DNA of 64,000 nucleotides, from positions 264,926,001 through 264,990,000 of the forward strand of contig NW_027362767.1 of assembly GCF_046119375.1 (NCBI RefSeq), given 5' to 3'. Position 1 is the first letter of the stretch. Each line of letters opens with the position of its first letter. Under the pieces are notes generated by a model. It was not told the origin of the DNA, ran no database searches, and was given only the letters and a program-made list of their open reading frames with translations. Source of the stretch: Phyllobates terribilis. Its lineage: Eukaryota. Below, in pieces: positions 12,362 through 57,028 of this stretch. The position numbers and the translations under genes were made by a program.

Positions 12362-31731
<19,370 letters not shown>

Positions 31732-32030
31732 GGCGCCGGTCCGTTACTATGGAAACTGGAGAGACTGCGGAGCCCCCCGGTAACTATGGAGACCAGAAGT
31801 TCACTGAACACTTGAGGAACCCGGAGCTGGGGGCGGAGACAGGCGGAACTGCGGGGGGCGGGCTCTGTGGCGTCACGTGACGAGCTTTCCATATGAATGC
31901 ACTGGGCGGGAACCTCGTGCAGCAGATGAGGTCTGAGGTAAATCTGTCTCCAGCGGCGGCTGCTCCGAGGGGAGCGGGTGTGTGGGGAGGTCACGTGTCC
32001 AAGTCTTACCCCCCCTATCTAGTCTCAGAG
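31732..32030 (-). promoter_or_regulatory. UAP1L1 CpG-rich promoter with a CLEAR/USF E-box palindrome and RFX X-box-like motifs
   Basis: CGTCACGTGACG 31871-31882; GTCACGTG 31990-31997; GTTACTATGGAAAC 31743-31756; GTAACTATGGAGAC 31780-31793; GC boxes near 31830-31862. Confidence 0.65.
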
Positions 32031-32036
32031 TTACAG

Positions 32037-34890
32037 CGCCCCATAATAATGTCAGCCAAAATACCCCCATAATAATGTCTGCCACAGTGCGCCCATAATA
32101 ATGTCTGCCACAGTGCGCCCATAATAATGTCTGCCACAGTGCCCCCATAATAATGTCTGCCACAGTGCCCCCATAATAATGTCTGCCACAGTGCCCCCAT
32201 AATAATGTCTGCCACAGTGCCCCCATAATAATGTCTGCCACAGTACCCCCATAATAATATAAGCCAAAATACCCCCATAATAATGTCTGCCACAGTACCC
32301 CCATAATAATATAAGCCAAAATACCCCCATAATAATGTCAGTCACAATGCCCCCATAATAATGTCAGCCACAATGCCCCATAATAATGTCATCCACAATG
32401 ACCCCATAATAATGTCAGCCACAATGCTCCATAATAATGTCAGCCACAGTGCCCCCATAATAATGTCAGCCACAATGACCCTATAATAATGTCAGCCACA
32501 ATGACCCCATAATAATGTCAGCCACAATGACCCTATAATAATGTCAGCCACAATGACCCCATAATAATGTCAGCCACAATGCCCCCATAATAATGTCAGT
32601 CACAATGCCCCCATAATAATGTCAGCCACAATGCCCCATAATAATGTCATCCACAATGCCCCCATAATAATGTCATCCACAATGCCCCATAATAATGTCA
32701 TCCACAATGCCCCCATAATAATGTCATCCACAATGCCCCCATAATAATGTCAGCCACAATGCCCCCATAATAATGTCATCCACAATGCTCCATAATAATG
32801 TCAGTCACAATGCCCCCATAATAATGTCATCCACAATGCCCCCATAATAATGTCATCCACAATGCCCCCATAATAATGTCAGCCACAATGACCCCATAAT
32901 AATGTCAGTCACAATGCCCCATAATAATGTCAGCCACAATGCCCCCATAATAATGTCAGCCACAATGCCCCCATAATAATGTCATCCACAATGACCCCAT
33001 AATAATGTCAGTCACAATGCCCCATAATAATGTCATCCACAATGACCCCATAATAATGTCAGCCACAGTGCCCCCATAATAATGTCAGCCACAATGCCCC
33101 ATAATAATGTCATCCACAATGCCCCCATAATAATGTCATCCACAATGACCCTATAATAATGTCATCCACAATGCCCCCATAATAATGTCATCCACAATGA
33201 CCCTATAATAATGTCAGCCACAATGCCCCATAATAATGTCAGCCACAATGCCCCATAATAATGTCAGCCACAATGCCCCATAATAATGTCATCCACAATG
33301 ACCCCATAATAATGTCATCCACAATGACCCCATAATAATGTCATCCACAATGCTCCATAATAATTTCATCCACAATGCCCCCATAATAATGTCAGCCACA
33401 ATGCCCCCATGATAATGTCAGCCACAATGCCCCATAATAATGTCATCCACAATGACCCCATAATAATATCAGCCACAGTGCCCCCATAATAATGTCAGCC
33501 ACAGTGCCCCCATAAAATTGTCAGCCACAGTGCCCCATAATAATGTCATCCACAATGCCCCCATAATAATGTCATCCACAATGCCCCCATAATAATGTCA
33601 TCCACAATGCCCCCATAATAATGTCATCCACAATGACCCCATAATAATGTCATCCACAATGCCCCCATAATAATGTCATCCACAATGACCCCATAATAAT
33701 GTCAGCCACAGTGCCCCCATAATAATGTCATCCACAATGACCCCATAATAATGTCAGCCACAGTGCCCCATAATAATGTCATCCACAATGACCCCATAAT
33801 AATGTCAGCCACAGTGCCCCCATAATAATGTCATCCACAATGCTCCATAATAATTTCATCCACAATGCCCCCATAATAATGTCAGCCACAATGCCCCCAT
33901 AATAATGTCATCCACAATGACCCCATAATAATGTCATCCACAATGCCCCATAATAATGTCATCCACAATGACCCCATAATAATGTCATCCACAATGCCCC
34001 ATAATAATGTCATCCACAATGACCCCATAATAATGTCAGCCACAATGCCCCCATAATAATGTCAGCCACAGTGCCCCCATAATAATGTCATCCACAATGA
34101 CCCCATAATAATGTCATCCACAATGCCCCATAATAATGTCATCCACAATGACCCCATAATAATGTCAGCCACAGTGCCCCCATAATAATGTCATCCACAA
34201 TGCTCCATAATAATTTCATCCACAATGCCCCCATAATAATGTCAGCCACAATGCCCCCATAATAATGTCAGCCACAATGCCCCATAATAATGTCATCCAC
34301 AATGACCCCATAATAATGTCAGCCACAGTGCCCCCATAATATTGTCAGCCACAGTGCCCCATAATAATGTCATCCACAATGACCCCATAATAATGTCAGC
34401 CACAGTGCCCCATAATAATGTCATCCACAATGACCCCATAATAATGTCATCCACAATGACCCCATAATAATGTCATCCACAATGCCCCATAATAATGTCA
34501 TCCACAATGCCCCCATAATAATGTCATCCACAATGCCCCCATAATAATGTCATCCACAATGCCCCCATAATAATGTCATCCACAATGCCCCCATAATAAT
34601 GTCAGTCACAATGCCCCCATAATAATGTCAGCCACAATGCCCCCATAATAATGTCAGCCACAATGACCCCATAATAATGTCAGTCACAATGCTCCATAAT
34701 AATGTCAGCCACAGTGCCCCCATAATAATGTCATCCACAATGCCCCCATAATAATGTAAGCCACAATGCCCCCATAATAATGTAAGCCACAATGCCCCCA
34801 TAATAATGTAAGCCACAATGCCCCATAATAATGTCATCCACAATGCCCCCATAATAATGTCAGCCATGGTGCCCCCATAATGATGTCGGC
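32037..34890. repeat. 23-24-bp minisatellite, ~2.9 kb, immediately upstream of the UAP1L1 promoter
   Basis: Unit CCCATAATAATGTCA(G/T)CCACA(A/G)TG(A/C)C. Confidence 0.98.
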
Positions 34891-44999: not shown

Positions 45000-45209
45000 T
45001 CACAGCTTGGTGGTCTTCTGCAGGTAGATGGTGCTCTGCTTTTGCACGTAAGGGTTGGAGTATCCCTCCTTGTTGGTCGTCCTGAGGCACCTTCGGATAA
45101 AAAGCAGAACGACGTCCAGCAGCAACTCGAAGAACTCCGCCAAGGTGCAAACAGAGAAGCCCACCCACAGGCCCACCAAGCCCCCCATGTTAGAGATGAG
45201 GTTGATTTC
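45000..45209 (-). CDS. DEG/ENaC-like exon 11 (TM2 and C-terminus)
   Basis: TTTTTGCAG acceptor; EINLISNMGGLVGLWVGFSVCTLAEFFEL...KTTKL*. Confidence 0.95.
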   Translation of the reverse strand, partial: EINLISNMGGLVGLWVGFSVCTLAEFFELLLDVVLLFIRRCLRTTNKEGYSNPYVQKQSTIYLQKTTKL

Positions 45210-48200
45210 CTGCAAAAAGAAGAAAAAAAAACAAAACATAAGTCTATAGAGCTCTAGTCACATCCAAAATGTGTGCAGAATTAAGTCATTGCACCATCTC
45301 CTGATGCCAGTGTGACCAGGACCCCCATAATGCTGTGTCTTCATCACCTTGGGGCTCCCCCGTATTAAGTCTGGATGGAATATATATATAATATATTGTG
45401 CGTATAATTTAGGCTCAGTCTCACCGTCATTGATGGTTCTTCTTCTATCAGCTCAAAATTGAGTTGTTTGAAGTAAACAACGACCTTCACAAAATTATCC
45501 CTGGGGGAAATAAAAGACAGATTGGGGAACATTTTTAAAGGGCTGGTAATTCTAATATCAGCTTCTAATAGTGCAGAATCCTGAAGAGGCAGATAACAAG
45601 GAGCAGTAGACTGAATTCGATGTTTAAACCAGTGGAGGCAAGATACCTGATAAGAGCTGGATCATCCGCCACATCTTTCATTTGTCCTCCCCATTCCTTA
45701 AGGTCCTTAGAGAAATTTTCCTAAAAAGAGAGAAAAGTAATTTTCAGCTTCTACCAGTGGCAACATGCACCATTTGGATAAGTTATACCTTATTTTCAAC
45801 AGTCTTGGACCTTAGAGGACCCCCTGGTCTAATATGTGACACTTACAATAAAAGCGGTGGACGGCCACTGGGATCCGGACACGGTCAGCTCATAAATCTC
45901 CTCTCTGTTATAAGGAAGCAAAGAATATAACATAATTATCTGCTTCTGGAAAAGTGGCGCATGCACGGTGGTAAAGTAGCAGCACCGGAAATAAAGACGT
46001 CCCCGGAGCAATGAGTCGCAAGTACAAGCCACAGTCAGCTCTGGAGTGTGAATTTTTTAACAAACAGGTCTGAATTAATTTAGAGGTCTCATCTGGGGTC
46101 TTTATTAGTTTAGGGGTCTTCTCAGTGGTCTATATTTAGAGGTCTAAATTAACTTTGGGGGTCTTAATTTATGTGGTTTGGGGTCTTTATCTAGGGATCT
46201 GTTTTGAGGTCTACATATGTTTAGGGTTTTGGTCTTGGGTCTGAATTTATTTAGGGGTCTGGTCTGAAGTCTCAGTAAATTTAGGGGTCTCTATTAATTT
46301 AGGGGTCTGATCTGAGGTCAGTGAATTTAGGGGTCTGGTCTAGGGTGTGAATTAATTTGGGGTATGGTTTCAAGTCTATATTTAGAGGTTTCTTTAGGGG
46401 CCCGGTTTGGGGTCTAAAATTATTTTAGGTCCTGGTCTGGGGACTGAAATAATTTTGAGTGCATCCCTGTTTCTCTCATTCTTCTTCACAACTTATTAGA
46501 CAAGATGAGGACAGACTGTGGCTGCTGGCGCAGACACAGAGGACTGGGCATCAGTCAGATGTTGGAGGAGGGAGGCATAAACAGACAACTCAGGACTTCC
46601 ATATCCCCCTACTAACAAGATTCCTGCAAGAACCCTTGGTGGGAGCGGTAATGGGGGCCATATTGTCTTTTCCTCAGCTGTCCCAGGAAGAGATATAGCG
46701 GACTCTGTTCTGGTCAGTAACATCTTGTCTCCTCTGCTCTTGGTAAACTTGTGGCCCAGTCTGACTCGTCATGTGATTCAGAAAAGCAGAATTGGCTAAA
46801 ACGTCGTGTCAGCTGGAAACAGACAGGAAATTCTAGACCCGTGTCATGTGCTCTGCCGCTGCGTCGACACATTTGATGACTCAGCAATCAATAGTTAAAG
46901 GGGCATTGATTCACATCCTTATCCAGATGGGACGTGTCCTTCAAACTTTTGCTAAGTGGTCTCCAACTTGCATCTCAGAGCATTCTGGGAGTTGTAGTTT
47001 CCCTGCACCTGCAGATCTACAGGAGGTCGATAGGTGCAGTTGACTTACTTGCACTGTAGGGGGCAGTAGCAGTTCAGTTCATCGTGCGCAAATTTAAATT
47101 CATAGAGCTTCACACAGTCACCTGGAAGCGAAAGACGTAGTGATCAGAGCACGGTCAGCTATGTTTGTGATCCCTCTTACTTTCAGCCCCCTTGTATGGT
47201 TTCTCTTGGAGGGTTGGGCATATTCCTTTCTAATCGCACACTAACATTTCAACAGACAACCCTCCTATGTGGTTAAATTAAAGGGGCAGTAAACCTGGTA
47301 CAATCAGCTTATTAGAGTCTTATAGGTTAAACACTTACCACCTGGAAAAGGCTGATAACAGAGAGGATATTTAATAACTTAATGATAAAGTAGTGGAATG
47401 AACGTACGGACGGCAGCATTGCTGAGGTTACACTTGGGGTACCCCAGCTCTTTTGGACAAGCAAACTCCCAGTGAATGCAGCCGCAATTGTCGATGATGT
47501 TCTGCTGGGCACACGTCCGTTTACAGGCCTGTGGGCGACAGGAAAACGGACAGCGAGGTCAGAGAAGACAGACACGCATGTATCGAGGGGCTGACCAAAA
47601 TTTTCCTTATACTGATCGCAAGCAGAGATGTTAAAAATGCAAAGGATCCCTGTTACAATGAGAATGCTTCATTGGTCTAAGACAGGGGCGGGGAACCTCA
47701 GGCCTTTTCAGGGAAGATTCCTGTGCTCTGCAGTGTTTGGGCCGGGAGCTGTGAATTGATGGCCACTGGCCTTTTAATTTCTTCTTGCTGTGTAAGCACG
47801 AGCACGTAGTGTTCACTACTGAACCCTGAGGCGCATGCAGTGAAGGGTTAATTCAGGGCCGGCTCCAGGTTTTTGTGGGCCCCGGGCGAAAGAGTTTCAG
47901 TGGGCACCTTTAGCCCATACCACGATTCATGATGCACAGATACGGCGGAGAAATATAGATATACAACACAGGGCCCAGCCTGCCACCTCATCCTTCACAT
48001 ATGCAAACATGCACGCACACACACAGTACGCAGACACGCACGCACACAGTACGCAGACACGCACACACACAGTACGCAGACACGCACACACACAGTACAC
48101 AGACACGCACACACACAGTACACAGACACGCACACACACAATACGCAGACACGCACACACACAATAGGCAGGCACGCAGGGACACAATACGCCGACGCGC

Positions 48201-51200
48201 ACACACACAATAACCAGACACGCACACACACAATACGCAGACACGCACACATACAATACGCAGACATGCACACACACACAATACGCAGGGACACAATACG
48301 CCGACGCGCACACATACAATACGCAGACACGCACACATACAATACGCAGACACGCGCACACACAATACGCAGACACGCGCACACACAATACGCAGGCACG
48401 CACACACACAATACGCAGGCACGCGCACATACAATACGCAGGCACGCACACACACAATACGCAGACACGCACACACACAATACGCAGACACGCACACACA
48501 CAATACGCAGGGACACTATACGCCGACGCGCACACACACAATAACCAGACATGCACACACACAATACGCAGACACGCACACATACAATACGCAGACACAC
48601 AATACGCAGGCACGCGCACACACACAATACGCAGGCACGGACGCAGGCACACAATACGCCGACACGCACACACACAATAAGCAGACACGTACACACAATA
48701 TGCAGACACGCACACACACAATACGCAGACACGCACACACAATACGCGCACACAATACGCAGACACGCACACACATTGCACAGACATGCGCATGCACACG
48801 GTACGCAGGCATGCACACACATACACACATGAACATAGTACACAGATATACACACACAATACGCAGACACGCACAGATACATACACATACACTCCCTCTC
48901 CCCAGTCCCTCAAGCTCGCTGCCTTGGGGTAACCCTGGACTCTGAACTCTCCTTCAAACCACATATCCAAGCCCTTTCCACGTCCTGCTGACTCCAACTC
49001 AAAAATATCTCCCGGATCCGCACATTCCTCAACCATGAATCTGCAAAAACACTAGTGCATGCCCTCATCATCTCCCGCCTTGACTACTGCAACCTCCTGC
49101 TCTGTGGCCTCCCCTCTAACACTCTCGCACCCCTCCAATCTATCCTAAACTCTGCTGCTCGACTAATCAACCTGTCCCCCCACTATTCCCCAGCCTCTCC
49201 TCTCTGTCAATCTCTTCACTGGCTCCCCATTGCTCAGAGACTCCAGTTCAAAACCCTAACCATGACATACAAAGCCATTCACAACCTGTCTCCTCCATAT
49301 ATCTCTGACCTAGTCTCCCGGTACATACCTGCACACAACCTCCGATCCTCACAAAATCTCCTTCTCTACTCCCCTCTTATCTCCTCCTCCCACAATCGCA
49401 TACAAGATTTCTCCCGTGCATCCCCCCCTACTCTGGAACTCTCTACCCCAACATATCAGACTCTCGCCTACCATTGAAGCCTTCAAAAGAAACCTGAAGA
49501 CCCACCTCTTCCGACAAGCCTACAACCTGCAGTAACCACCGCTCCACCATACCGCTGCACGACCAGCTCTACCCTCACCTACTGTATCCTCACCCATCCC
49601 TTGTAGATTGTGAGCCCTCGCAGGCAGGGTCCTCGCTCCTCCTGTACCAGTCGCTGTCACATTGTGTTCAAGATTATTGTAATTGTTCTTGTATTATACC
49701 CCTTCTTCACATGTAAAGCGCCATGGAATAAATGGCGCTATGATAATAAATAATAATAATAACATACATATTTGAACACATTCTTAAAAACACATATAAA
49801 ACAGACATAAATATATATATACACTGACATACACAGACATTCACATCATACATGCACACACACACATAAGAAATATTTTTTATATGGGGATTGGAGAAGC
49901 TCGCTCACCTGCCCCCCTGGCCTGTGTTTCGTCCAGCTCCTCAGTCATGTGGCAGTGCAGGGCCTCAGGCGTGTCACATGGCCCTGGACCATCTGGGGGG
50001 CCCACTCGCCGTCAGGGCCCGGGCCACTTCCCCCTTCATCTGTGCAGGGCCGCCGGTGCTGTTCAAGCCCTGCTCTGCTACATGCAGCAGCAGTAGTCAG
50101 TGTGCGGTCAGTGTGCTGCTGCACCACCAATCAGGACCAGTGCTGTCACTTTCCTGACATGGCCGCGCGCTGTGTCTGGTAGTAATGACGTGGCAGGTGC
50201 GAAACACAAGCACAATTAAAGGCGCAGTGTCGCCCCTGCGTGTCATTACTACCAGACACAGCCGCACAGCGTGCGGCCATGTCTTGAAAGTGACAGCACT
50301 GGGCCTGATTGGTGGAGCAGCAGCACACTGACCGCACACTGCTGCTGCTGCATGAAGCAGAGCAGGGCTTGAACAGCACCGGCGGCCCTGCACAGATGCC
50401 GGGGAAGCGGCCCGGGCCCCGATAATGAGTGGGCCCCCCTGATAGTCCAGGGCCCCAGCACTTGCCCGGGTACGCCGGGTGCGGACGCCGGCCCTGGGTA
50501 ACGTCCTGACACCAGTGCCAGCGTCAGGCCGTACTTTGTGGGCAGGGTTAGCTCACAATTTGTACGGCCCCCGAAGGATGATACAAATATCCAAATGGCC
50601 CTTGGCAGAAAGAAGGTTGACCACCCCTCCATTGGTTGTGTGTGGTACTGCAGCTCAGCACCATTGACTTTAATACCAGACGTAACCACGTTTTGCGGTT
50701 TCTGAAAGCTATTGTGTTTTTCTAATACTTCACATATGGCGGTAATGTTTGGGTTTGGTGGGGTTTTTTTGAGCACGGTAATGTGAATGAACCCATGATC
50801 TACCACAATACATATCAATATGTCTGCCGTGCTGTCAGTCCCAGCAGGACAAGCTGACCTCTCGCGTGTACCCAGATCCATAAACATCCTTATAGAAGTT
50901 CTTGATGTTCTCCCCTTCCGTGCACTGACTTATGTACGGGGATTTCAGCCTTTCAATGTGAACCTGCAAAACAGAACAACAAATCCAGCCATTACATTAA
51001 TATAATACAACATGGAGAAAAGTATTGGGCTAGCGTCTCAATTACTGAATTCTGGTTTCTCCTTCAGTCCTGTCGCCCCGGTGTATAACCTTCAGCCTCC
51101 CGCCATGCCGTTTGCCTTTACTAATGTGACAGAGTGGTCGGTGGTGCAGAGCTCAACTATACCAGCGCGGTCCTGTAATAGGAGTCACCGGTGTAACAAC

Positions 51201-54200
51201 TCCATTCCTGACATTTTTTCCTTCTGAATCTTCCCCCATCACCTGTGAGTGATATTACTGAGAAGTGGAAGGAATTGTAGCAACTCAGCCATGAAGTGGA
51301 GACCCCATAACGTTACAGAGCGGGGGGCTGAGTGCTGAGGAGCAGAGGGCAGAAAAGTCACCACCGCTCTGCTGACCCTAAAACTGCAGAGTCCAGACCT
51401 CCTCTGGTATCAGCACTAACACTGCGCCCCGCCAGGAGCTTCATGGCCGAGCAGCTGCATGCAGCCGTACATCACCAAGCACAATGCCGAGCGTCGGATG
51501 GAGTGGTGTAAAGCTGCCACCACTGGACTCTGGAGGAGACGTGTTCTGTGCAGTGATGGATCTCACTTCTCTATCTGGCGTCTGATGGAGGAGTCTGGGT
51601 TTGGTAAATGCCAGGAAAACATTACCCCCTGACTACACAGTGCCCGCTGTACAGAGGGTGGAGGATAATGCTATGGGCTGTTATCAGGGCTCTGCCTTTT
51701 AATTCCACAAGTTAGACATTGTGGACAATTGTAGCTTCAGCTTTGTGGGAACTTTGGGGAAGACCCTTTTCTGTCCTCATGACTGTGCACAGTGCACAAG
51801 CTCCATACAGACATGGGGGGGAGAACATGACCGGCTGCACAAAGCCCGGACCTCAGCCCCATCCAAGAATGGAGATTGTGAGCCTGGCCTCCCCCCAACA
51901 TCAGAGTCTGACCTCGCAAATATCTTCAGGATGAAGGGGCAAAAATTCCACAGTCTCCTCCAAAATCTGGTTGAAATCCTTTCTAGAAGAGCAAAGCCGT
52001 TATATCTGCAGTGGGGACGACTCCATATTAATGTCTATGGGTGTAGCTAGAGGACAGAAAAGCTCCTGGAGGATGGTGAGGGGGGCACATACTTTTCTTT
52101 ATGTAGTTTCCACTATGATTGTTTGCTTATGACCAGGGTGCCATCTAGTGGTCAGTAGGTGGAAACATCTTTGTGGAACCGATCTCTTTTTTTCGGATCA
52201 ATCCTATAAGAAGACTAGTGGTGTAGCTATAGGGCTAGATCCATGCCGTGAGGGGGTCCTGAAGGTCCTTCTACAACATAAAAGGACAGCAGCTCTACAT
52301 ATGTTATGCACGCAGAACTACAAGGGTAGCTGCTGACAAAAAGTTGGGAGTACCCTTTGCTTCTTGATGCAGGGGCTTGTATATCATAGATCTTGAAGGG
52401 ACTCAAAATTTTGCAAACCATGGGAGGAGAAATTTACCCCAGAGTTATAGAAAGAAGATGCAAGGGTTACCAAGCACCTGGCTCCCTGGGCGGAGTGGCA
52501 GAATAATGGTGGACCATTGTGATTTTTACCATGAGGAACGGGTGGCGTCTTATATCAGTGATGACATGGGGGGGGGGGGGTTCAGAACAGGAGCGGAGGA
52601 TATAGACCTCTGTATGAGATCTGTTACATGACACTGGCCCTTTAAGGCATGTTGTTACCTTCATCATGCCGATATCGGTTTCAGCTCCAGGTGGAACATT
52701 GACACCTTCATCCTCAGGGAACGGCATCTGGGTCTGATCGTGAATGAGGAGACGGATGCCAGCGGAGTGCGTCATGTCCCGCACATATTCAATCTGCTGA
52801 ATGAACAGCTCCAGGTGCAGACCTGCTGGGCACACGGACGGGTCAATACCCAAAACCATTGAAGACAGGGTCAAGGTTTATGTGGGCAATGGAGCCTATC
52901 CTACACTCACTGGGCCATTTCTTCTGCCAATGTGACAGCGCCTCTAGTGCCTTCCAGCAATCACAACCTTTTTCTACTGTCTGCAGTGCCCTCCCCCTTA
53001 CCATTACAGCCCCTGAAGCCCCATATAAAGCTAAGGGAACTGCATATAAAACGAATGCATTTTCTGGAAAGCGTAGACCCACCCATCCCCCTCCGTCGTG
53101 CAAGATTATTCCAGAACCTTCTAAAAATACAGCATCAAAACGGCCTTGCAGGCAGGTACAGAAAGTCCGTCCATTACTATTATACCGGCTTATTAGTAAT
53201 AACCAGGTCACCATTAATGATACCGCCATCTCCTGCTCAGCAGCCACACCTGGTAATTCACAGCTCGCTCCTATCTGCACTAGAATATGCAATAGCAATC
53301 TGCTCTGATTATTGAGGTTTTTTTCCTGCCATTTTTGATGCTTTTTTGTGCAGATTTGAAGCAGTGTTATTTTTAGTGCAGAAACGCTGGGATTTCTGCT
53401 GTTAAAAACAGAGTGAAATCTGGATCGACAGAAAAAAACGATATGCTATGGATGGAAATATCCACATTGTGGGACAGTTTGCATGCAGAAAATATCCAGA
53501 ATGTATAGATTTGTTGAAATCTGGTAATGTATTATTTTCTGCACTCAAATCTGTGTTGAAAAATCCAGAAGTCTGCAATGTATGAACTTCACCTAAGGGC
53601 TCGCTCACACAAGCGTATAACACAACCAAGTGCTATGCATTGTTTTATCACATAACACTCGGCCCAGTGTTACTCTATGGGGCAGCTCAGATCTGTAATT
53701 TTTTTTTCTCATGCCGATTCGGCATAGTAGAACAATCCCAGCATGGTGCGGGTGCATCCGAGAATCGGATCTCACTCACTCATACAAGTTTATGGGTGCA
53801 TGTGAAACATCGGACAGCACTCGGATGTCATCCAAGTGCAGTGAAATTCCCTCAGATTTCGGCAATGGAGGAGATGGAGAAATTACTTTCTTTGTCTCTT
53901 CCGCACCTAGGCTGCGATTCCCTCATGCAGCACAGCGCACGGACACTCTGACAGAGTTTGATCCTAGTGTCATTTGCATAATCTGCTCCGATTTTCTCGC
54001 ACGAGAGACCATACGCTCGTGTGACCCCGGCCTAAACCAGAAACACACAAACTCAGGACTTTCGTTCCAATGACTTTACTGTCACCCTGAGCCCTCCCCT
54101 CCTGAGCCTGGCATACATAACCATGGTGGGGGTCCTTACCGTACATAAACCCTGCTTTGGTGATGTTGAGTGGCAGGTTGTTCGCTGGGTTCCCTCGATA

Positions 54201-57028
54201 ATCTGTTGGCTTCAGGGAGTTGAAGGTATAACAATTCCCAAATTTATAGTTAATAAAAGTGGAGAAGAAACTAAAAAAAAAAAGAAGAAAAGTAGTAAGA
54301 ATCCAGCACAACTGTCCAGCTCTGACAATCCTCCATGAGCTGTGAGATGTGGGCTACTACTGGAAAGTTCTGGAGGTTTCTAATGGACTTTATCGGGCCA
54401 ATTCATCATTGTTTTTAGCCCCTCATATAAGGTTCTAAGGCTACGTTCACATGCTGTAGACAGCATTTTTTTTTCAGCTGCAACAATGACAAAAAATACA
54501 ACAATTTTTTTTTTAAAGCATTTTTCTGCAAAAAAAATGCACCCTAATCACAAGGTTTCAAACAAAGACTTACAGTGACTTTTTATTTGCATTATTGAGT
54601 CTGCACCCTTTATATCTTTTAACCTTACTTGGTTTTGAAAATTTTTTTTCTATTCGCCATTATGACTGCAGTTTTGGTTATCCAGATGTTTTCAGCCTAA
54701 TTCATCATTTTGTGGCTTTTCAAAACTTCGTCCAACTAGACTCCTGCACCTATGAAGTACAAAATCTGTCTCATTTGTTTTTCAGAGTTGAAGACTAATA
54801 AGTGACATTTTTAAGCTTATTGAAAGGATCATGCAACTGATGTGAGGAAAAAAAACGAGAGCCAAAAAGTAATCTTTGAATTTGAGTAAAATTCATTAAA
54901 GATCGTGATAAATTTTGCACAAAGTCCATCAACGCTATAAGAAAAGACAAAAACAAAAAATAGATAGCAAATGCTGAATTTTCCCGGATGCTTCAATCCC
55001 TTACCATATAAAGCAGATCTCTGATTTATATCAGTGAGTGGAAACATTACGGGTCTAAAATCCTGTACACACAAGGGCCCCAATTTGTCATTTTTTTGTC
55101 TTTTTGTGCTGATGAATTTTTCGCCAAATTTATCAAAATGGGGTCACAATGTTTACTAAATTCAAAGATGCTTACTTTTAGTCGCCTTTTTAGAGTGAAA
55201 AATCTCACAATCCTCGCAATAAGCTGTATCTAAAAAAAAATTACAGATTTTGCACTCCACTAGAGTGCTGGGGTCCAATTGTACAAAAATTTTGTGATAT
55301 ATCAAGAAGTCGTAAATGATGAATTTGGGCTAAAACATCTGGATAACCAAAGCCACAGCCATAATGTGGACCAACAAAAAAAGCTGCACTGTAAGGCGCA
55401 AATTTAAATAATGAATAGAGTGCAAATAAAGTATTTTATAAGAACAATTTTCCCCCAGAAAAAAGGTGCTGCAAAAGTGAGGATGACCTGTCCCCTGGAA
55501 GTTTTGATATTCTGAGAGCGGACAGTACAAGGATTGACCGTTTTTTGCTTGATCCTATTATTATAAGAAGCTACATAATGGCTCCATTAGTGGGGTGCGC
55601 ACCGATGTCTCCGCCAACTGTTGTCAGATGATTAAAGAAAGACCGTAAAAGATCAGAGGAAAATCAGCCAGGAGTCACTAGTGGATTAATGAGGTGCAGG
55701 AAAGCGAGGTGGAGCGAGGGAGCGGCCTCTTTATAGCCAACGTAACTCTGAGTGGCTGATAACAGAGAATACCTGATGTATTAAAAGCATCAGTCTCCTT
55801 ACAACTGATATGGTTCAGGAAACCTTACATAACAAGGAAAAATATATCATTAGGAAAGGGACAGTAAGGGATCTGTTACTTTCTCTGAGTGAGGATTTGC
55901 TAACACATGCATGCTCAGACAGAGTGCATATGTATATGGGGGATGTCGGGAGAAGTAGCTGCCGGATGAATGAGATATCAGTATATCCTGCCGTACCTGG
56001 CGTTGCATTCCTGACCATGGAAGTTGCAGAAGATCAGCATGTCATCCAGCTGGTGGCCCATCTCTACCTTCTGCTCATCTGGTAACTGGTTAAATTCCGA
56101 GGCGAACCTGTTGAAGGCGCCGGCGTACTGGACGCTGTCATCTTGACATTCAGACGTTGAGTTGACGTGAGAGCGATTTCTCCGGTGGTTCATCTCTAGA
56201 CCTGAGTCCTAGGAAGGAAAAGAACAAATTGGAACTCTTTATAGTAACTGCTTACTGACAGTGAATGGGAACATACTCCGTCCAGACCTAATCCATCTCA
56301 CATGGCCTGCCATGTTTTTGCGCATGTCCAAAAAAGACAGGACGGAGGCCAGACCGTGTCCAAAGTGTATCTGCCAGCTTCATGGAAATGAATAGCTTTG
56401 TTGGGGATTCCAACAGAGACCGTGACGTAGAGCTCAGCGTTGAGGACTGAATATGTGTGAATCTAGCCTAAACTGGATGTAATTGTAACCAAACTTCAGC
56501 TCTGGGACATATAGTTAGGTCACGCACAAGGAAATTAGCAAAAATTACTCTTCCTAAGTTTGTCACACGTTACGCTGGAGGACAGGGGAAGTGTAATATG
56601 TTGATAAATATGATGCATGCTTAGACCGCCATATTTTTCGACGATCGCATGTACATAGGTGGAAGAATTCGCACCTGTAGGGAGGTAGTCATCGCAAAAC
56701 TCTTCTTGATGGAGGACAGTTTCACGCTGTTCAGATTGCAGATAGTGATGGCTGGGAACTTCAGCTTGGCACTGGAGATGAGCATAATCTTTTCATGGGA
56801 TGGGTAGGTGTAGTAGGTCATGACCATCTCGGTGCACTGCCAGAGGGCGCAGCACAGGGCGAAACTCACAAAGAACAACCAGACCAGGCGACGGAACCAG
56901 TGCCGAGAGCGGAAGATGTTGGGAATCCCATGGGCCGAGGTGTGCTGCAGGACGGTATGGCCCAGCTTCCTTAACGTCCTGGCATCATATGAGGAGGACG
57001 CCAGGACCGTCATCTCCGGGTAACCCAT
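45000..57028 (-). CDS. Divergent DEG/ENaC-family (amiloride-sensitive sodium channel-like) subunit, complete 11-exon CDS (1578 nt, 525 aa)
   Basis: join(complement 56675-57028, 55997-56208, 54140-54270, 52659-52822, 50859-50963, 47408-47528, 47049-47121, 45847-45904, 45647-45720, 45425-45500, 45000-45209). All GT-AG and in frame with no stops; Kozak ACA-ATG-G. Motifs: TSAHG, TM1, FPAITICNLN, GHQLDDMLIFCNFHGQEC, FGNCYTFN, GIRLLIHDQ..PFPEDEG, Cys-rich thumb, SQWPS, TM2 ISNMGGLVGLWVGFS. Confidence 0.95.
45425..45500 (-). CDS. DEG/ENaC-like exon 10
   Basis: TTTCCCCCAG / GTGAGA, 76 bp; DNFVKVVVYFKQLNFELIEEEPSMT. Confidence 0.93.
45647..45720 (-). CDS. DEG/ENaC-like exon 9 (knuckle)
   Basis: TCTTTTTAG / GTATCT, 74 bp; its phases fit both neighbours. 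Confidence 0.85.
45847..45904 (-). CDS. DEG/ENaC-like exon 8
   Basis: TATAACAG / GTAAGT, 58 bp; EEIYELTVSGSQWPSTAFI. Confidence 0.93.
46060..46450. repeat. Degenerate short-unit satellite (TTAGGGGTCTGGTCTGAGGTCT-like)
   Basis: Repeated TTAGGGGTCT / GGGGTCT motifs within the channel intron. Confidence 0.6.
47049..47121 (-). CDS. DEG/ENaC-like exon 7
   Basis: CGCTTCCAG / GTAAGT, 73 bp; DCVKLY...NCYCPLQC. Confidence 0.93.
47408..47528 (-). CDS. DEG/ENaC-like exon 6 (thumb)
   Basis: CCCACAG / GTACGT, 121 bp; ACKRTCAQQNIIDNCGCIHWEFACP...KC. Confidence 0.94.
48010..48890. repeat. (CA)-rich degenerate minisatellite (ACACACAATACGCAGACACGC)
   Basis: Directly visible ~21-bp units. Confidence 0.95.
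48893..49762 (+). mobile_element. L2-clade LINE 3' fragment (RT C-terminus plus (TAA)n tail)
   Basis: HALIISRLDYCNLLLCGLP...LQSILNSAARL...LHWLP...FKTL; ends TGTAAAGCGCCATGGAATAAATGGCGCTA..(TAA)n. Confidence 0.92.
50859..50963 (-). CDS. DEG/ENaC-like exon 5
   Basis: TTTTGCAG / GTCAGC, 105 bp; VHIERLKSPYISQC...GYTRE. Confidence 0.93.
51430..52045 (+). mobile_element. Highly decayed Tc1 transposase remnant
   Basis: Residual PYITKHNAERRMEWCK and PDLSPIQ motifs with many deletions. Confidence 0.7.
52659..52822 (-). CDS. DEG/ENaC-like exon 4
   Basis: CCCAGCAG / GTAACA, 164 bp; LHLELFIQQIEY...PPGAETDIGMMK. Confidence 0.95.
53596..54031. mobile_element. MITE (T2-like)
   Basis: Imperfect TIRs GGCTCGCTCACACAAGCG / CGCTCGTGTGACCCCGGCC with TAA flanks. 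Confidence 0.55.
54140..54270 (-). CDS. DEG/ENaC-like exon 3
   Basis: Poly-T AG / GTAAGG, 131 bp; NYKFGNCYTFN. Confidence 0.95.
55997..56208 (-). CDS. DEG/ENaC-like exon 2 (finger)
   Basis: CCTTCCTAG / GTACGG, 212 bp; ...GHQLDDMLIFCNFHGQECNA. Confidence 0.92.
56675..57028 (-). CDS. DEG/ENaC-like coding exon 1 (HG motif, TM1)
   Basis: ATG at 57028, donor CAG/GTGCGA, 118 codons. Confidence 0.92.

What the first reader, a model, noticed from the sequence alone, without database searches (positions are those of the whole stretch)
45000..57028. Intact, divergent DEG/ENaC channel gene that is apparently none of the canonical vertebrate subunits
Seen: an uninterrupted 11-exon, 525-aa ORF with canonical splice sites and every structural hallmark of a trimeric DEG/ENaC subunit, in a region where the neighbouring transposons are decayed. 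Established: vertebrates are described as having ENaC alpha/beta/gamma/delta, ASIC1-4 and BASIC/ASIC5. Inference: this protein fits none of them well. Its palm segment (GLHLELFIQQIEY..SAGIRLLIHDQTQMPFPEDEG..PPGAETDIG) is ENaC-like. Its thumb C-terminal spacing is C-x-C-x-x-x-C (CYCPLQC), as in ASIC and invertebrate DEG channels, rather than the ENaC C-xxx-C-xxx-C. It may be an old extra ENaC-related lineage retained in amphibians, with unknown ligand and selectivity. This is the best candidate for an undescribed system in the window.
Basis: partly seen in the sequence, partly recalled or inferred. Interest (0 to 1): 0.88.

Follow-up and report, generated by a model that had tools for sequence, protein, structure and literature searches.

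The report
Orphan ENaC-like sodium channel gene
This poison-frog gene encodes an intact, strongly conserved channel subunit of the DEG/ENaC family. It belongs to a little-noticed third vertebrate branch that is neither ENaC nor ASIC, survives in fishes, amphibians and monotremes but not in other mammals, and has never been tested for function.

Summary
On the minus strand, 57028-45000, there are 11 exons with GT-AG introns throughout. They give a 1578-nt ORF of 525 aa with every DEG/ENaC hallmark.

RNA contigs from four runs of the same species confirm 9 of the 10 splice junctions exactly. Exon 1 (N-terminus and TM1) is not seen in that RNA, and the RefSeq model for this species (Phyllobates terribilis, 402 aa) starts in exon 2. 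Even so, exon 1 is under strong purifying selection: dN/dS is 0.07 for exon 1 and 0.06 for the whole CDS.

The protein is not an orthologue of any SCNN1 or ASIC gene. It is 21-26% identical to them, against 74-76% to lungfish and monotreme orthologues. It belongs to a vertebrate clade with two old paralogues, here called X1 (this gene) and X2. The clade occurs in non-teleost ray-finned fishes, osteoglossomorphs, lungfish, amphibians and monotremes. X1 sits between SAPCD2 and UAP1L1.

One paper (Wang et al. 2022) mentions fish members in passing as "uncharacterized ENaC-like proteins". I found no functional data. The protein lacks the ENaC GRIP domain and PY motif, and it has a G-F-S filter.

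Verdict: a real gene and a new member of a known kind. It is already auto-annotated and functionally orphan.

The parts
56675..57028 (-). Exon 1 (354 nt, aa 1-118): N-terminus, HG gating motif (TSAHGIP), TM1, start of ectodomain (FPAITICNLN)
   Evidence: define it. Pfam ASC scores 72.7 bits. dN/dS is 0.074 against Engystomops. Only 2 of 118 aa differ from Dendrobates and Ranitomeya imitator. It is NOT covered by the RNA contigs and is absent from the RefSeq model P0292.
55997..56208 (-). Exon 2 (212 nt): finger helices and a disordered loop carrying the conserved HRRNRS polybasic motif and N-glycosylation sequon
   Evidence: define it. The junction to exon 3 is confirmed in runs X1, X3 and X4. 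Motif conservation is shown. The loop is disordered in the AF2 model (pLDDT below 50 at residues 123-141).
54140..54270 (-). Exon 3 (131 nt): beta-ball (FINYKFGNCYTFN)
   Evidence: define it. Joints 54270/55997 and 52822/54140 are seen in RNA contigs.
52659..52822 (-). Exon 4 (164 nt): palm segment GLHLELFIQQIEY...PPGAETDIGMMK
   Evidence: define it. Its best PDB hit is ENaC beta (6e-8). The joints on both sides are confirmed.
50859..50963 (-). Exon 5 (105 nt)
   Evidence: define it. Joints 50963/52659 and 47528/50859 are confirmed.
47408..47528 (-). Exon 6 (121 nt): first half of the thumb (ACKRTCAQQNIIDNCGC)
   Evidence: define it. The joints are confirmed.
47049..47121 (-). Exon 7 (73 nt): end of the thumb with C-Y-C-P-L-Q-C
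   Evidence: define it. Joints 47121/47408 and 45904/47049 are seen in all four runs. The motif is conserved in X1 and X2.
45847..45904 (-). Exon 8 (58 nt)
   Evidence: define it. The joints are confirmed.
45647..45720 (-). Exon 9 (74 nt)
   Evidence: define it. The joints are confirmed in all four runs.
45425..45500 (-). Exon 10 (76 nt): palm strands before TM2
   Evidence: define it. The joints are confirmed.
45000..45209 (-). Exon 11 (210 nt including TGA): pre-TM2 SNMGG, TM2 with the G-F-S filter, and a short C-terminus ending T-K-L
   Evidence: define it. Pfam ASC matches it. Joint 45209/45425 is confirmed. Conservation is shown.
46617..46762 (-). Alternative exon inside intron 7, spliced to exon 8 (seen in run X1 only)
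   Evidence: The joint 45904->46617 has GT..AG ends on the minus strand, and contig record 2 covers 46617-46762. Its coding consequence was not worked out.

Best explanation
This is the Phyllobates terribilis copy of 'X1'. X1 is one of two ancient paralogues (X1 and X2) that form a vertebrate DEG/ENaC subfamily distinct from ENaC (SCNN1A/B/G/D) and from ASIC1-5.

Shown here:
- The gene is intact, correctly spliced in RNA for exons 2-11, and under strong purifying selection over its whole length, including exon 1.
- It lies in conserved synteny: SAPCD2 | X1 | UAP1L1.
- It encodes a protein with the complete DEG/ENaC fold.

Inferred from established family knowledge:
- The 525-aa product assembles as a trimer into a voltage-independent, Na+-preferring cation channel that amiloride probably blocks. 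The evidence is two TM helices, the N-terminal HG gating motif, 14 conserved ectodomain cysteines, an ENaC-type pre-TM2 'SNxGG', a Gly at the amiloride position ('GLW') and a G-x-S filter (here G-F-S).
- Its finger is compact and all-helical, as in ASIC, with no ENaC GRIP domain. It has no PY motif. ENaC-style release of an inhibitory tract and Nedd4-2 control are therefore not expected.
- Two conserved features suggest other regulation. One is a polybasic R-R-N-R/N-glycosylation motif in a disordered finger loop, at roughly the position of the gamma-ENaC furin site. The other is a C-terminal S/T-x-hydrophobic tail that looks like a PDZ ligand.
- X1 occurs without X2 in monotremes, caecilians and osteoglossomorphs, so it probably works as a homomer or with other partners.

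The activating stimulus is unknown.

Rough odds: functional channel subunit 0.85; amiloride-sensitive Na+-preferring pore 0.6; homomerically active 0.5.
For: - Gene model.
- Pfam ASC.
- RNA joints for 9 of 10 introns at the exact predicted sites.
- dN/dS against Engystomops: 0.059 overall, 0.074 for exon 1, dS 0.6-0.8, with identical exon structure.
- Exon 1 differs at 2 of 118 aa within dendrobatids, against 18 of 407 in the rest.
- Orthologues: Dendrobates and Ranitomeya imitator 96%, Engystomops 90%, lungfish 74%, echidna 75%, platypus 76%, gar 68%.
- ML tree (LG+C20, careful search): X1 100/100, X2 100/99, X1+X2 100/100, with species-tree-like topology in both.
- Synteny with UAP1L1 and/or SAPCD2 in echidna, Dendrobates, Engystomops and Bufo, and a UAP1L1 exon hit in the window at 31561-31686.
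- AF2 model of the 96%-identical Dendrobates orthologue: pLDDT 85, pTM 0.77, DEG/ENaC fold. The finger is helical only, with a disordered stretch at 123-141.
- About 78 residues are missing relative to human gamma between residues 116 and 238.
- Motif conservation.
- Literature: the arowana XP_018588349.1 used by Wang et al. 2022 as 'gamma-like / ENaC-like' is in the same 90% cluster as the Arapaima X1 orthologue.
Against: - Exon 1, which carries TM1, is not covered in any of the RNA contig sets of this species.
- One contig reads 58 nt from exon 2 into intron 1. Another carries 124 unplaced nt 5' of exon 2.
- RefSeq models in this frog and several others start at M124. The full-length mRNA is therefore unproven in this species.
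- No electrophysiology exists for any member of the clade.
- The Phe in the G-F-S filter is unusual, so selectivity cannot be predicted.
- My tree has only ENaC gamma as a canonical reference and no ASIC. The deep placement therefore rests on Wang et al.'s tree and on similarity scores.
- The runs are labelled 'RNA?' (guessed), and low intronic coverage shows some pre-mRNA or DNA.
Confidence: 0.8

Rival explanations
1. It is the frog orthologue of a canonical gene (SCNN1A/B/G/D, ASIC1-4 or ASIC5/BASIC) that has simply diverged fast.
For: NCBI names for the orthologues include 'epithelial sodium channel subunit gamma-like' and 'degenerin-like protein asic-1'. The best PDB hits are ENaC gamma and beta.
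Against: - Identity to every canonical subunit is 21-26%, and the best score is 208 bits. The gene itself evolves slowly, at 75% identity between frog and echidna.
- Swiss-Prot holds separate Xenopus ENaC alpha, beta and gamma proteins, which are only 21-26% identical to it.
- Its position between SAPCD2 and UAP1L1 is, from memory, not the locus of any human SCNN1 or ASIC gene.
- The tree and AU test separate it from ENaC gamma.
- The published tree places the arowana and gar members outside the ENaC alpha, beta, gamma, delta and ASIC clades.
Confidence: 0.02
2. In this species the gene no longer makes a channel. The main product is the exon-1-less transcript, which encodes a 402-aa protein lacking TM1 or is non-coding. 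The intact exon 1 is then a relic.
For: - Depth over exon 1 is zero in the four RNA contig sets laid (X1-X4), and three organism-A RNA runs (X2, X3, X25) hold none of its sampled words.
- RefSeq XP_073496716.1 (P0292) starts at M124.
- Similar truncated or 5'-alternative models exist in Anomaloglossus, Dendropsophus, Bufo gargarizans, Hyperolius, Pseudophryne and Eleutherodactylus.
Against: - Exon 1 has dN/dS 0.074 at dS 0.61 against Engystomops.
- Within dendrobatids it is more conserved than the rest of the protein: 2 of 118 against 18 of 407 differences.
- The start codon, Kozak context and splice donor are intact.
- The RNA set is four small runs from one study, of unknown tissue.
- Full-length 525-aa models exist for Dendrobates, Ranitomeya, Bufo and Engystomops.
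Confidence: 0.08
3. X1 is an obligate heteromeric or auxiliary subunit. It would work with X2, or with ENaC or ASIC subunits, rather than as a channel on its own.
For: - ENaC works as a heterotrimer of paralogous subunits (established knowledge).
- X1 and X2 are both retained in gar, sturgeons, Polypterus, lungfish, frogs and salamanders.
Against: - No X2 was found in monotremes, caecilians or osteoglossomorphs, which keep X1.
- X1 has its own complete pore motifs.
Confidence: 0.25

Closest known systems
'Uncharacterized ENaC-like proteins' clade of Wang, Balchak et al. 2022 (eLife 11:e75796, PMC8791634): spotted gar XP_006632023.1, Asian arowana XP_018588349.1 and lancelet sequences
   Same: The arowana entry is the X1 orthologue. 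It is in the same 90% cluster as Arapaima P0178, which is 63% identical to the window protein. The gar entry carries the N-terminal motif of gar X2, P0181. That paper's ML tree puts them outside ENaC alpha, beta, gamma, delta and ASIC.
   Different: In the text and supplementary passages I read, that paper discusses these proteins only for ray-finned fishes and lancelet, as BLAST by-catch. In those passages it does not split X1 from X2, report tetrapod or monotreme members, give synteny, or test function.
ENaC subunits (SCNN1A/B/G/D), especially gamma and beta
   Same: These are the best sequence matches: 195-208 bits for gamma and beta. The palm, the thumb body and the pre-TM2 'LSNxGG' are ENaC-like. 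The G/S-x-S filter and the Gly at the amiloride site are kept. A polybasic motif lies near the position of the gamma furin site.
   Different: - Only 21-26% identical.
- About 78 residues shorter in the finger, with no GRIP domain.
- No PPxY motif.
- Thumb spacing is C-x-C-x3-C rather than C-x3-C-x3-C.
- Different locus.
- An exclusive clade with gamma is rejected, p=0.011.
ASIC1-4 and ASIC5/BASIC
   Same: Similar size (about 525 aa) and a compact helical finger. In the Foldseek search of solved structures, ASIC1 chains gave the best matches. The thumb-end spacing C-x-C-x3-C matches ASIC from memory only; it was not tested here.
   Different: About 25% identical. The scores are 155 bits to ASIC1 and 126-128 bits to ASIC5. 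The thumb and palm sequences hit ENaC and not ASIC1. The pre-TM2 motif is 'SNMGG' rather than the ASIC 'GDIGG' (from memory). Proton sensitivity is unknown.
Uncharacterised ambulacrarian and lophotrochozoan DEG/ENaC genes (echinoderm and hemichordate 'alpha/gamma-like' predictions). This may be the TadNaC10-associated subclade of Elkhatib et al. (bioRxiv 2022.06.28.497943).
   Same: These are the next-best hits after the X family in both database searches, at 30-35% identity. They group with the X clade rather than with ENaC gamma in the tree.
   Different: Support for the exact sister group is weak (80/32). None is functionally characterised. The link to the TadNaC10 subclade is my inference and was not tested.

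Membership tests
DEG/ENaC superfamily (Pfam ASC, PF00858) | Significant match to the family profile along the protein | tested here: met
   Exon translations hit PF00858 in order across profile positions 2-455. Exon 1 scores 72.7 bits and exon 4 scores 42.6 bits. All orthologues carry a precomputed PF00858 hit.
DEG/ENaC superfamily (Pfam ASC, PF00858) | Two TM helices flanking a large cysteine-rich ectodomain, with the palm, beta-ball, finger, thumb and knuckle fold | tested here: met
   Hydropathy peaks lie at about residues 47-66 and 474-495. The AF2 model has pLDDT 85. Foldseek probability is 1.00 to ASIC1, FaNaC and ENaC, with TM-scores of 0.6-0.78. Fourteen family-conserved cysteines are present.
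DEG/ENaC superfamily (Pfam ASC, PF00858) | N-terminal HG motif and a G/S-x-S selectivity motif in TM2 | tested here: met
   TSAHGIP lies at residues 30-36 and G-F-S at 473-475. Both are conserved across X1 and X2, with G-V/I-S in X2 and osteoglossomorphs.
DEG/ENaC superfamily (Pfam ASC, PF00858) | Trimeric, amiloride-sensitive cation channel activity | not testable with these tools
   This needs heterologous expression.
ENaC (SCNN1A/B/G/D) | Orthology to one of the four subunit clades | tested here: not met
   Identity is 21-26%. The clade is separate with 100/100 support, and the AU test rejects union with gamma, p=0.011. Only gamma was available for my tree. Alpha, beta and delta are covered by similarity scores and by the published tree.
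ENaC (SCNN1A/B/G/D) | GRIP domain in the finger with an inhibitory tract | tested here: not met
   Query residues 113-157 correspond to human gamma 116-238, so about 78 residues are missing. The AF2 finger is helices plus a 19-residue disordered loop, with no extra beta-strands.
ENaC (SCNN1A/B/G/D) | C-terminal PPxY (PY) motif for Nedd4-2 | tested here: not met
   The C-terminus reads ...EGYSNPYVQKQSTIYLQKTTKL, with no PPxY in X1 or X2.
ENaC (SCNN1A/B/G/D) | Thumb-end cysteine spacing C-x3-C-x3-C | tested here: not met
   The spacing here is C-Y-C-P-L-Q-C. HMMER needs 1-2-residue gaps against the human alpha, beta, gamma and delta spacing.
Phases here (the phase of the intron following each exon, exons 1-10) are 0,2,1,0,0,1,2,0,2,0.
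ASIC1-4 | Orthology or high similarity to ASIC1-4 | tested here: not met
   The scores are about 155 bits and about 25% identity to ASIC1 and ASIC2. No ASIC sequences were available for my tree.
ASIC1-4 | Proton-sensing determinants (for example His73 and Lys211 of ASIC1a) | not tested
   By eye only, an alignment against an ASIC1a sequence recalled from memory puts a His (H78, in 'YPSHEK') one position off ASIC1a His73, and that His is not conserved in X2. No ASIC1 alignment was examined for Lys211.
ASIC5 / BASIC | Orthology to ASIC5 | tested here: not met
   ASIC5 (9mky) is the weakest canonical match over the whole protein, at 126-128 bits. The thumb region barely matches it, E 0.5.
Vertebrate 'ENaC-like' orphan clade (X1/X2; Wang et al. 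2022) | Same orthogroup as arowana XP_018588349.1, with a sister paralogue containing gar XP_006632023.1 | tested here: met
   P0307 (arowana) falls in the X1 clade with the window protein. Gar P0181 falls in X2.
Vertebrate 'ENaC-like' orphan clade (X1/X2; Wang et al. 2022) | Conserved genomic position next to UAP1L1, downstream of SAPCD2 | tested here: met
   Echidna and Bufo show SAPCD2 | X1 | UAP1L1. Dendrobates and Engystomops show X1 | UAP1L1. The window has X1 at 57028-45000 (-) and a UAP1L1 exon at 31686-31561 (-).

The most novel reading that the evidence does not exclude
X1/X2 would be a third, functionally distinct class of vertebrate DEG/ENaC channel. On this reading it is the vertebrate survivor of an old deuterostome or bilaterian lineage whose other members are uncharacterised echinoderm, hemichordate and lophotrochozoan genes. 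It would be gated by a stimulus that no vertebrate DEG/ENaC is known to use, such as a peptide or another small extracellular ligand, or cleavage at the conserved R-R-N-R finger site. It would serve a physiology shared by anamniotes and monotremes but dispensable in sauropsids and therians.
Probability: 0.25. Interest if true: 0.85.

Novelty: new member of a known kind. Interest (0 to 1): 0.6.

Why it matters
Vertebrate DEG/ENaC channels are usually described as ENaC, ASIC1-4 and BASIC. This locus shows a further pair of paralogues. One of them changes very slowly (75% identity between frog and echidna, dN/dS about 0.06), so it must do something important, yet no member has been expressed or localised.

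The clade is directly testable, because Xenopus itself carries both genes and oocyte recording is the standard assay for this family.

It bears on three questions:
- How Na+ uptake works in ray-finned fishes that lack ENaC. Wang et al. 2022 raise these paralogues as candidates.
- What the ancestral finger looked like before ENaC acquired the GRIP domain.
- Why monotremes keep a gene that I found in no therian or sauropsid proteome.

It also corrects the public model for this species, which lacks the TM1-encoding exon.

Tried and rejected
1. Complete reference phylogeny. I could not obtain SCNN1A/B/D or any ASIC sequence as usable records. The word-indexed protein search returned only one canonical protein, turtle ENaC gamma. 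The exon-1 HMMER search added two more gamma sequences. Naming 20 other hits gave only invertebrate proteins. The tree therefore has ENaC gamma as its only canonical family.

2. Exon 1 to exon 2 junction. Exon 1 had zero depth in all but run X4, which has a single unspliced contig reaching 4 nt into exon 1 at the intron-1 boundary. The junction was not among the joints shown. A Logan contig from another frog (P0002) turned out to read from exon 1 into the intron, so it is not a spliced mRNA.

3. dN/dS against closer relatives.

4. Literature. Searches for the NCBI names ('unc-8-like', 'gamma-2-like', 'gamma-like') found nothing relevant. A review on fish Na+ uptake does not mention these genes.

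5. Second TM1 exon. I looked in the window for a second exon of this type, as ASIC1a/1b have. tblastn found none.

6. Non-coding RNA. Rfam finds no structured RNA in 44-58 kb.

7. Rejected readings. ASIC5/BASIC orthology is rejected because it gives the weakest canonical score. Pseudogene is rejected because the ORF is intact, omega is 0.06 and the RNA is spliced.

Full report
**1. The observation**

The window holds a DEG/ENaC gene on the minus strand. Translated ORF pieces between 57028 and 45000 match Pfam ASC (PF00858) in collinear order.

I aligned a 525-aa orthologue from the 1.8-billion-protein HMMER search (P0001, Ascaphus truei) to the window with tblastn. I then fixed the boundaries by reading frame and splice consensus.

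The result is 11 exons: 57028-56675, 56208-55997, 54270-54140, 52822-52659, 50963-50859, 47528-47408, 47121-47049, 45904-45847, 45720-45647, 45500-45425 and 45209-45000. All ten introns are GT-AG. The CDS is 1578 nt, giving 525 aa and a TGA stop, with no internal stop. The ATG is the first after an upstream in-frame stop and has a strong Kozak context.

**2. Species and public annotation**

RefSeq XP_073496716.1, 'degenerin deg-1-like' of Phyllobates terribilis (P0292, 402 aa), is 100% identical to residues 124-525 of my model. The window therefore comes from that species.

The public model starts at a methionine inside exon 2. It lacks exon 1, which encodes the N-terminus, the HG motif and TM1. 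Full-length 525-aa models exist for Dendrobates tinctorius and Ranitomeya imitator (96.2% identical), R. variabilis (95.6%), and Bufo and Engystomops (88-90%). Exon-1-less or 5'-alternative models exist for several other frogs.

**3. Transcription**

Four small runs labelled 'RNA?' from the same organism hold the exons. Laying their contigs on the gene gives joints at exactly the predicted sites for introns 2 to 10:
- 54270/55997, 52822/54140 and 50963/52659;
- 47528/50859, 47121/47408, 45904/47049, 45720/45847, 45500/45647 and 45209/45425.

Most of these appear in three or four runs. One 894-nt contig spans exons 6-5-4-3-2.

Exon 1 is the exception.
- Depth is zero over 56650-56849 in X1-X3. 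In X4 it is 0.39, from one contig that crosses the intron-1/exon-1 boundary unspliced.
- RNA runs of this organism hold none of the exon 1 words, while DNA runs hold all of them.
- One contig continues 58 nt from exon 2 into intron 1.
- Another contig carries 124 unplaced nucleotides 5' of the exon 2 acceptor.

The sampled tissues therefore appear to use another 5' end. The exon 1 to exon 2 junction is unconfirmed. A minor alternative exon in intron 7 (donor at 46617) appears in one run.

**4. Selection**

The Engystomops pustulosus locus (L002) has the same eleven exons with the same lengths and GT-AG sites, and its CDS translates exactly to P0164. Nei-Gojobori dN/dS between the two frogs is 0.059 overall (dS 0.74), 0.074 for exon 1 (dS 0.61) and 0.055 for the rest.

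Within dendrobatids, exon 1 differs at 2 of 118 residues from D. tinctorius and R. imitator (5 of 118 from R. variabilis). The rest differs at 18 of 407. Exon 1 is therefore a constrained coding exon, whatever the sampled RNA shows.

**5. What it is not**

phmmer of full-length orthologues against all PDB sequences gives, in bits:

| Human or other target | Bits |
|---|---|
| ENaC gamma | 203-208 |
| ENaC beta | 195-202 |
| ENaC alpha | 173 |
| ASIC1 | about 155 |
| ASIC2 | 146 |
| ENaC delta | 130 |
| FaNaC | 123-134 |
| ASIC5 | 126-128 |

Foldseek of an AlphaFold2 model of the Dendrobates orthologue (pLDDT 85, pTM 0.77) against Swiss-Prot models finds every canonical family at 21-26% identity. 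This includes Xenopus laevis ENaC alpha, beta, beta-2, gamma and gamma-2. By contrast, the window protein is 74% identical to the lungfish orthologue, 75-76% to echidna and platypus, 68% to gar and 66% to sterlet. A gene this slow-evolving cannot be a diverged orthologue of a 25%-identical human gene.

**6. What it is**

Two database searches recover the same set of relatives. One used a single sequence and the other a profile of X1 plus X2.

- X1, at 60-96% identity to the window protein. It is found in many anurans, Pleurodeles, three caecilians, Protopterus, echidna and platypus, gar, sterlet, paddlefish and Huso, Polypterus (partial), and the osteoglossomorphs Arapaima, Scleropages and Brienomyrus.
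- X2, at 42-51% identity. It is found in gar, Amia, sturgeon and paddlefish, Polypterus, Protopterus, many frogs, Pleurodeles and Ambystoma.

After these the scores drop straight to echinoderm and hemichordate proteins (30-35%). No shark, lamprey, coelacanth, sauropsid, therian or other teleost member appears. No canonical ENaC or ASIC reaches the top 120 of the profile search.

An IQ-TREE LG+C20 PMSF tree of 68 sequences gives X1 100/100, X2 100/99 and X1+X2 100/100 on a stem of 1.0 substitutions per site. Within each paralogue the topology follows the species tree: ray-finned fishes against lungfish, monotremes and amphibians. The X1/X2 duplication therefore predates the split between ray-finned and lobe-finned fishes.

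ENaC gamma falls elsewhere, on a long branch next to nematode degenerins, and a long-branch warning applies. Forcing X and ENaC gamma into one clade costs 17.9 lnL units and is rejected by the AU test (p=0.011). Two caveats apply: only gamma represents ENaC, and the test was run after I had seen the tree.

**7. Synteny**

In echidna and Bufo bufo the gene lies between SAPCD2 (opposite strand, upstream) and UAP1L1 (same strand, downstream). In Dendrobates and Engystomops, UAP1L1 follows it. In the window a UAP1L1 exon lies at 31686-31561 on the same strand, downstream of the gene.

From memory, human SAPCD2 and UAP1L1 are neighbours at 9q34.3 with no DEG/ENaC gene between them, and no SCNN1 or ASIC gene maps there. 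This was not tested here.

**8. Literature**

Wang, Balchak et al. 2022 (PMC8791634) report that BLAST with human ENaC in ray-finned fishes finds 'uncharacterized ENaC-like proteins'. [quoted passage not shown]

Their supplementary list names spotted gar XP_006632023.1 and Asian arowana XP_018588349.1. The arowana accession is a member of the Arapaima X1 cluster. The gar sequence carries the N-terminal motif of gar X2. The clade has therefore been seen in passing in fishes.

I found no paper that reports tetrapod or monotreme members, separates the two paralogues, or tests function. Subscription journals are not in the searched library.

**9. Anatomy and likely mechanism**

Shown:
- the HG motif (TSAHGIP);
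- two hydrophobic TM segments;
- 14 family-conserved ectodomain cysteines;
- pre-TM2 'ISNMGG', of ENaC type;
- 'GLW' with Gly at the position of the ENaC amiloride-site residue;
- a G-F-S filter, conserved in X1 except in osteoglossomorphs (G-I/V-S), and G-V-S in X2.

The finger is short. Residues 113-157 stand opposite human gamma residues 116-238, and the model shows only helices plus a disordered loop. The ENaC GRIP domain is therefore absent. There is no PPxY motif.

The thumb body matches ENaC beta, delta, alpha and gamma, and not ASIC1. It ends in C-x-C-P-L-Q-C, which is conserved in X1 and X2.

Two conserved features are specific to X1. The first is 'HRRNRS' in the disordered finger loop. 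It combines an R-x-x-R motif with an N-x-S sequon. It is present from Polypterus and sturgeon to monotremes, deleted in osteoglossomorphs and absent in X2. The second is a C-terminal T-x-hydrophobic tail. Both X1 and X2 share an 'NPY' motif after TM2.

Inference: this is a trimeric, voltage-independent, Na+-preferring channel subunit that amiloride probably blocks. It is not regulated in the ENaC manner by release of an inhibitory tract or by Nedd4-2. It may be modulated at the polybasic or glycosylated loop and anchored through a PDZ protein. The gating stimulus is unknown. Because X1 persists without X2 in monotremes, caecilians and osteoglossomorphs, homomeric function is plausible.

**10. 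Verdict**

The gene is real, intact, spliced and strongly constrained. It belongs to an orphan vertebrate DEG/ENaC subfamily.
- The lineage is much wider than amphibians.
- It is not demonstrably closer to ENaC than invertebrate genes are.
- It is already auto-annotated and has been mentioned once in the literature.
- The TM1 exon lacks transcript support in this species.

I rate it a new member of a known kind, of moderate to good interest, because function is fully testable and unknown.

Noticed in passing
window 56675-57028 vs RefSeq XP_073496716.1 (P0292): The public protein model for this gene in this species is 402 aa and starts at M124 in exon 2. It omits the conserved exon that encodes the N-terminus, HG motif and TM1. 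Several other frog RefSeq models have the same truncation.
   Followed up: yes
window 56209-56266 and the 5' side of 56208: One RNA contig reads 58 nt from exon 2 into intron 1. Another has 124 nt of unplaced sequence spliced onto the exon 2 acceptor. This suggests an alternative 5' exon or promoter that bypasses exon 1.
   Followed up: partly
window 46617-46762 (-): An alternative exon inside intron 7 is spliced to exon 8 in one RNA run, at a depth similar to the main isoform. Its coding effect was not worked out.
   Followed up: no
window 48012-48741: A tandem array of a 23-nt CA-rich unit (about 31 copies, 80% matches) lies in intron 5. It produces long spurious Cys/Val ORFs on the minus strand.
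   Followed up: partly
window about 48800-49800: A repeat in intron 5 has very high summed RNA contig depth, up to about 100,000. It carries an ORF at 49055-49477 (+) that looks like a transposon remnant ('RLDYCNLLL...'). It is presumably an abundant transcribed interspersed repeat and not part of the gene.
   Followed up: no
window 31561-31686 (-): An exon matches UAP1L1 (tblastx against the echidna neighbour, E 6e-9). X1 next to UAP1L1 is conserved from frogs to monotremes.
   Followed up: yes
window 22000-34000: Strand composition is extreme. GC skew is +0.2 to +0.3 with AT skew +0.25 at 22-28 kb. From 28 to 32 kb GC content is 0.66 with GC skew -0.5 to -0.7, and the negative skew (-0.51) continues to 34 kb at 0.43 GC.
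   Followed up: no
residue 139 of the window protein (exon 2, about 56144-56146): This species has Cys where the other dendrobatids and Engystomops have Tyr (SECQDD against SEYQDD). It adds a further ectodomain cysteine in the disordered finger loop.
   Followed up: no
L001 (echidna) and cluster of P0172: Both monotremes (echidna XP_038623643.1 and platypus XP_028910070.1) keep a full-length X1. No therian or sauropsid protein of this clade was found in a 5.8-billion-protein collection.
   Followed up: partly
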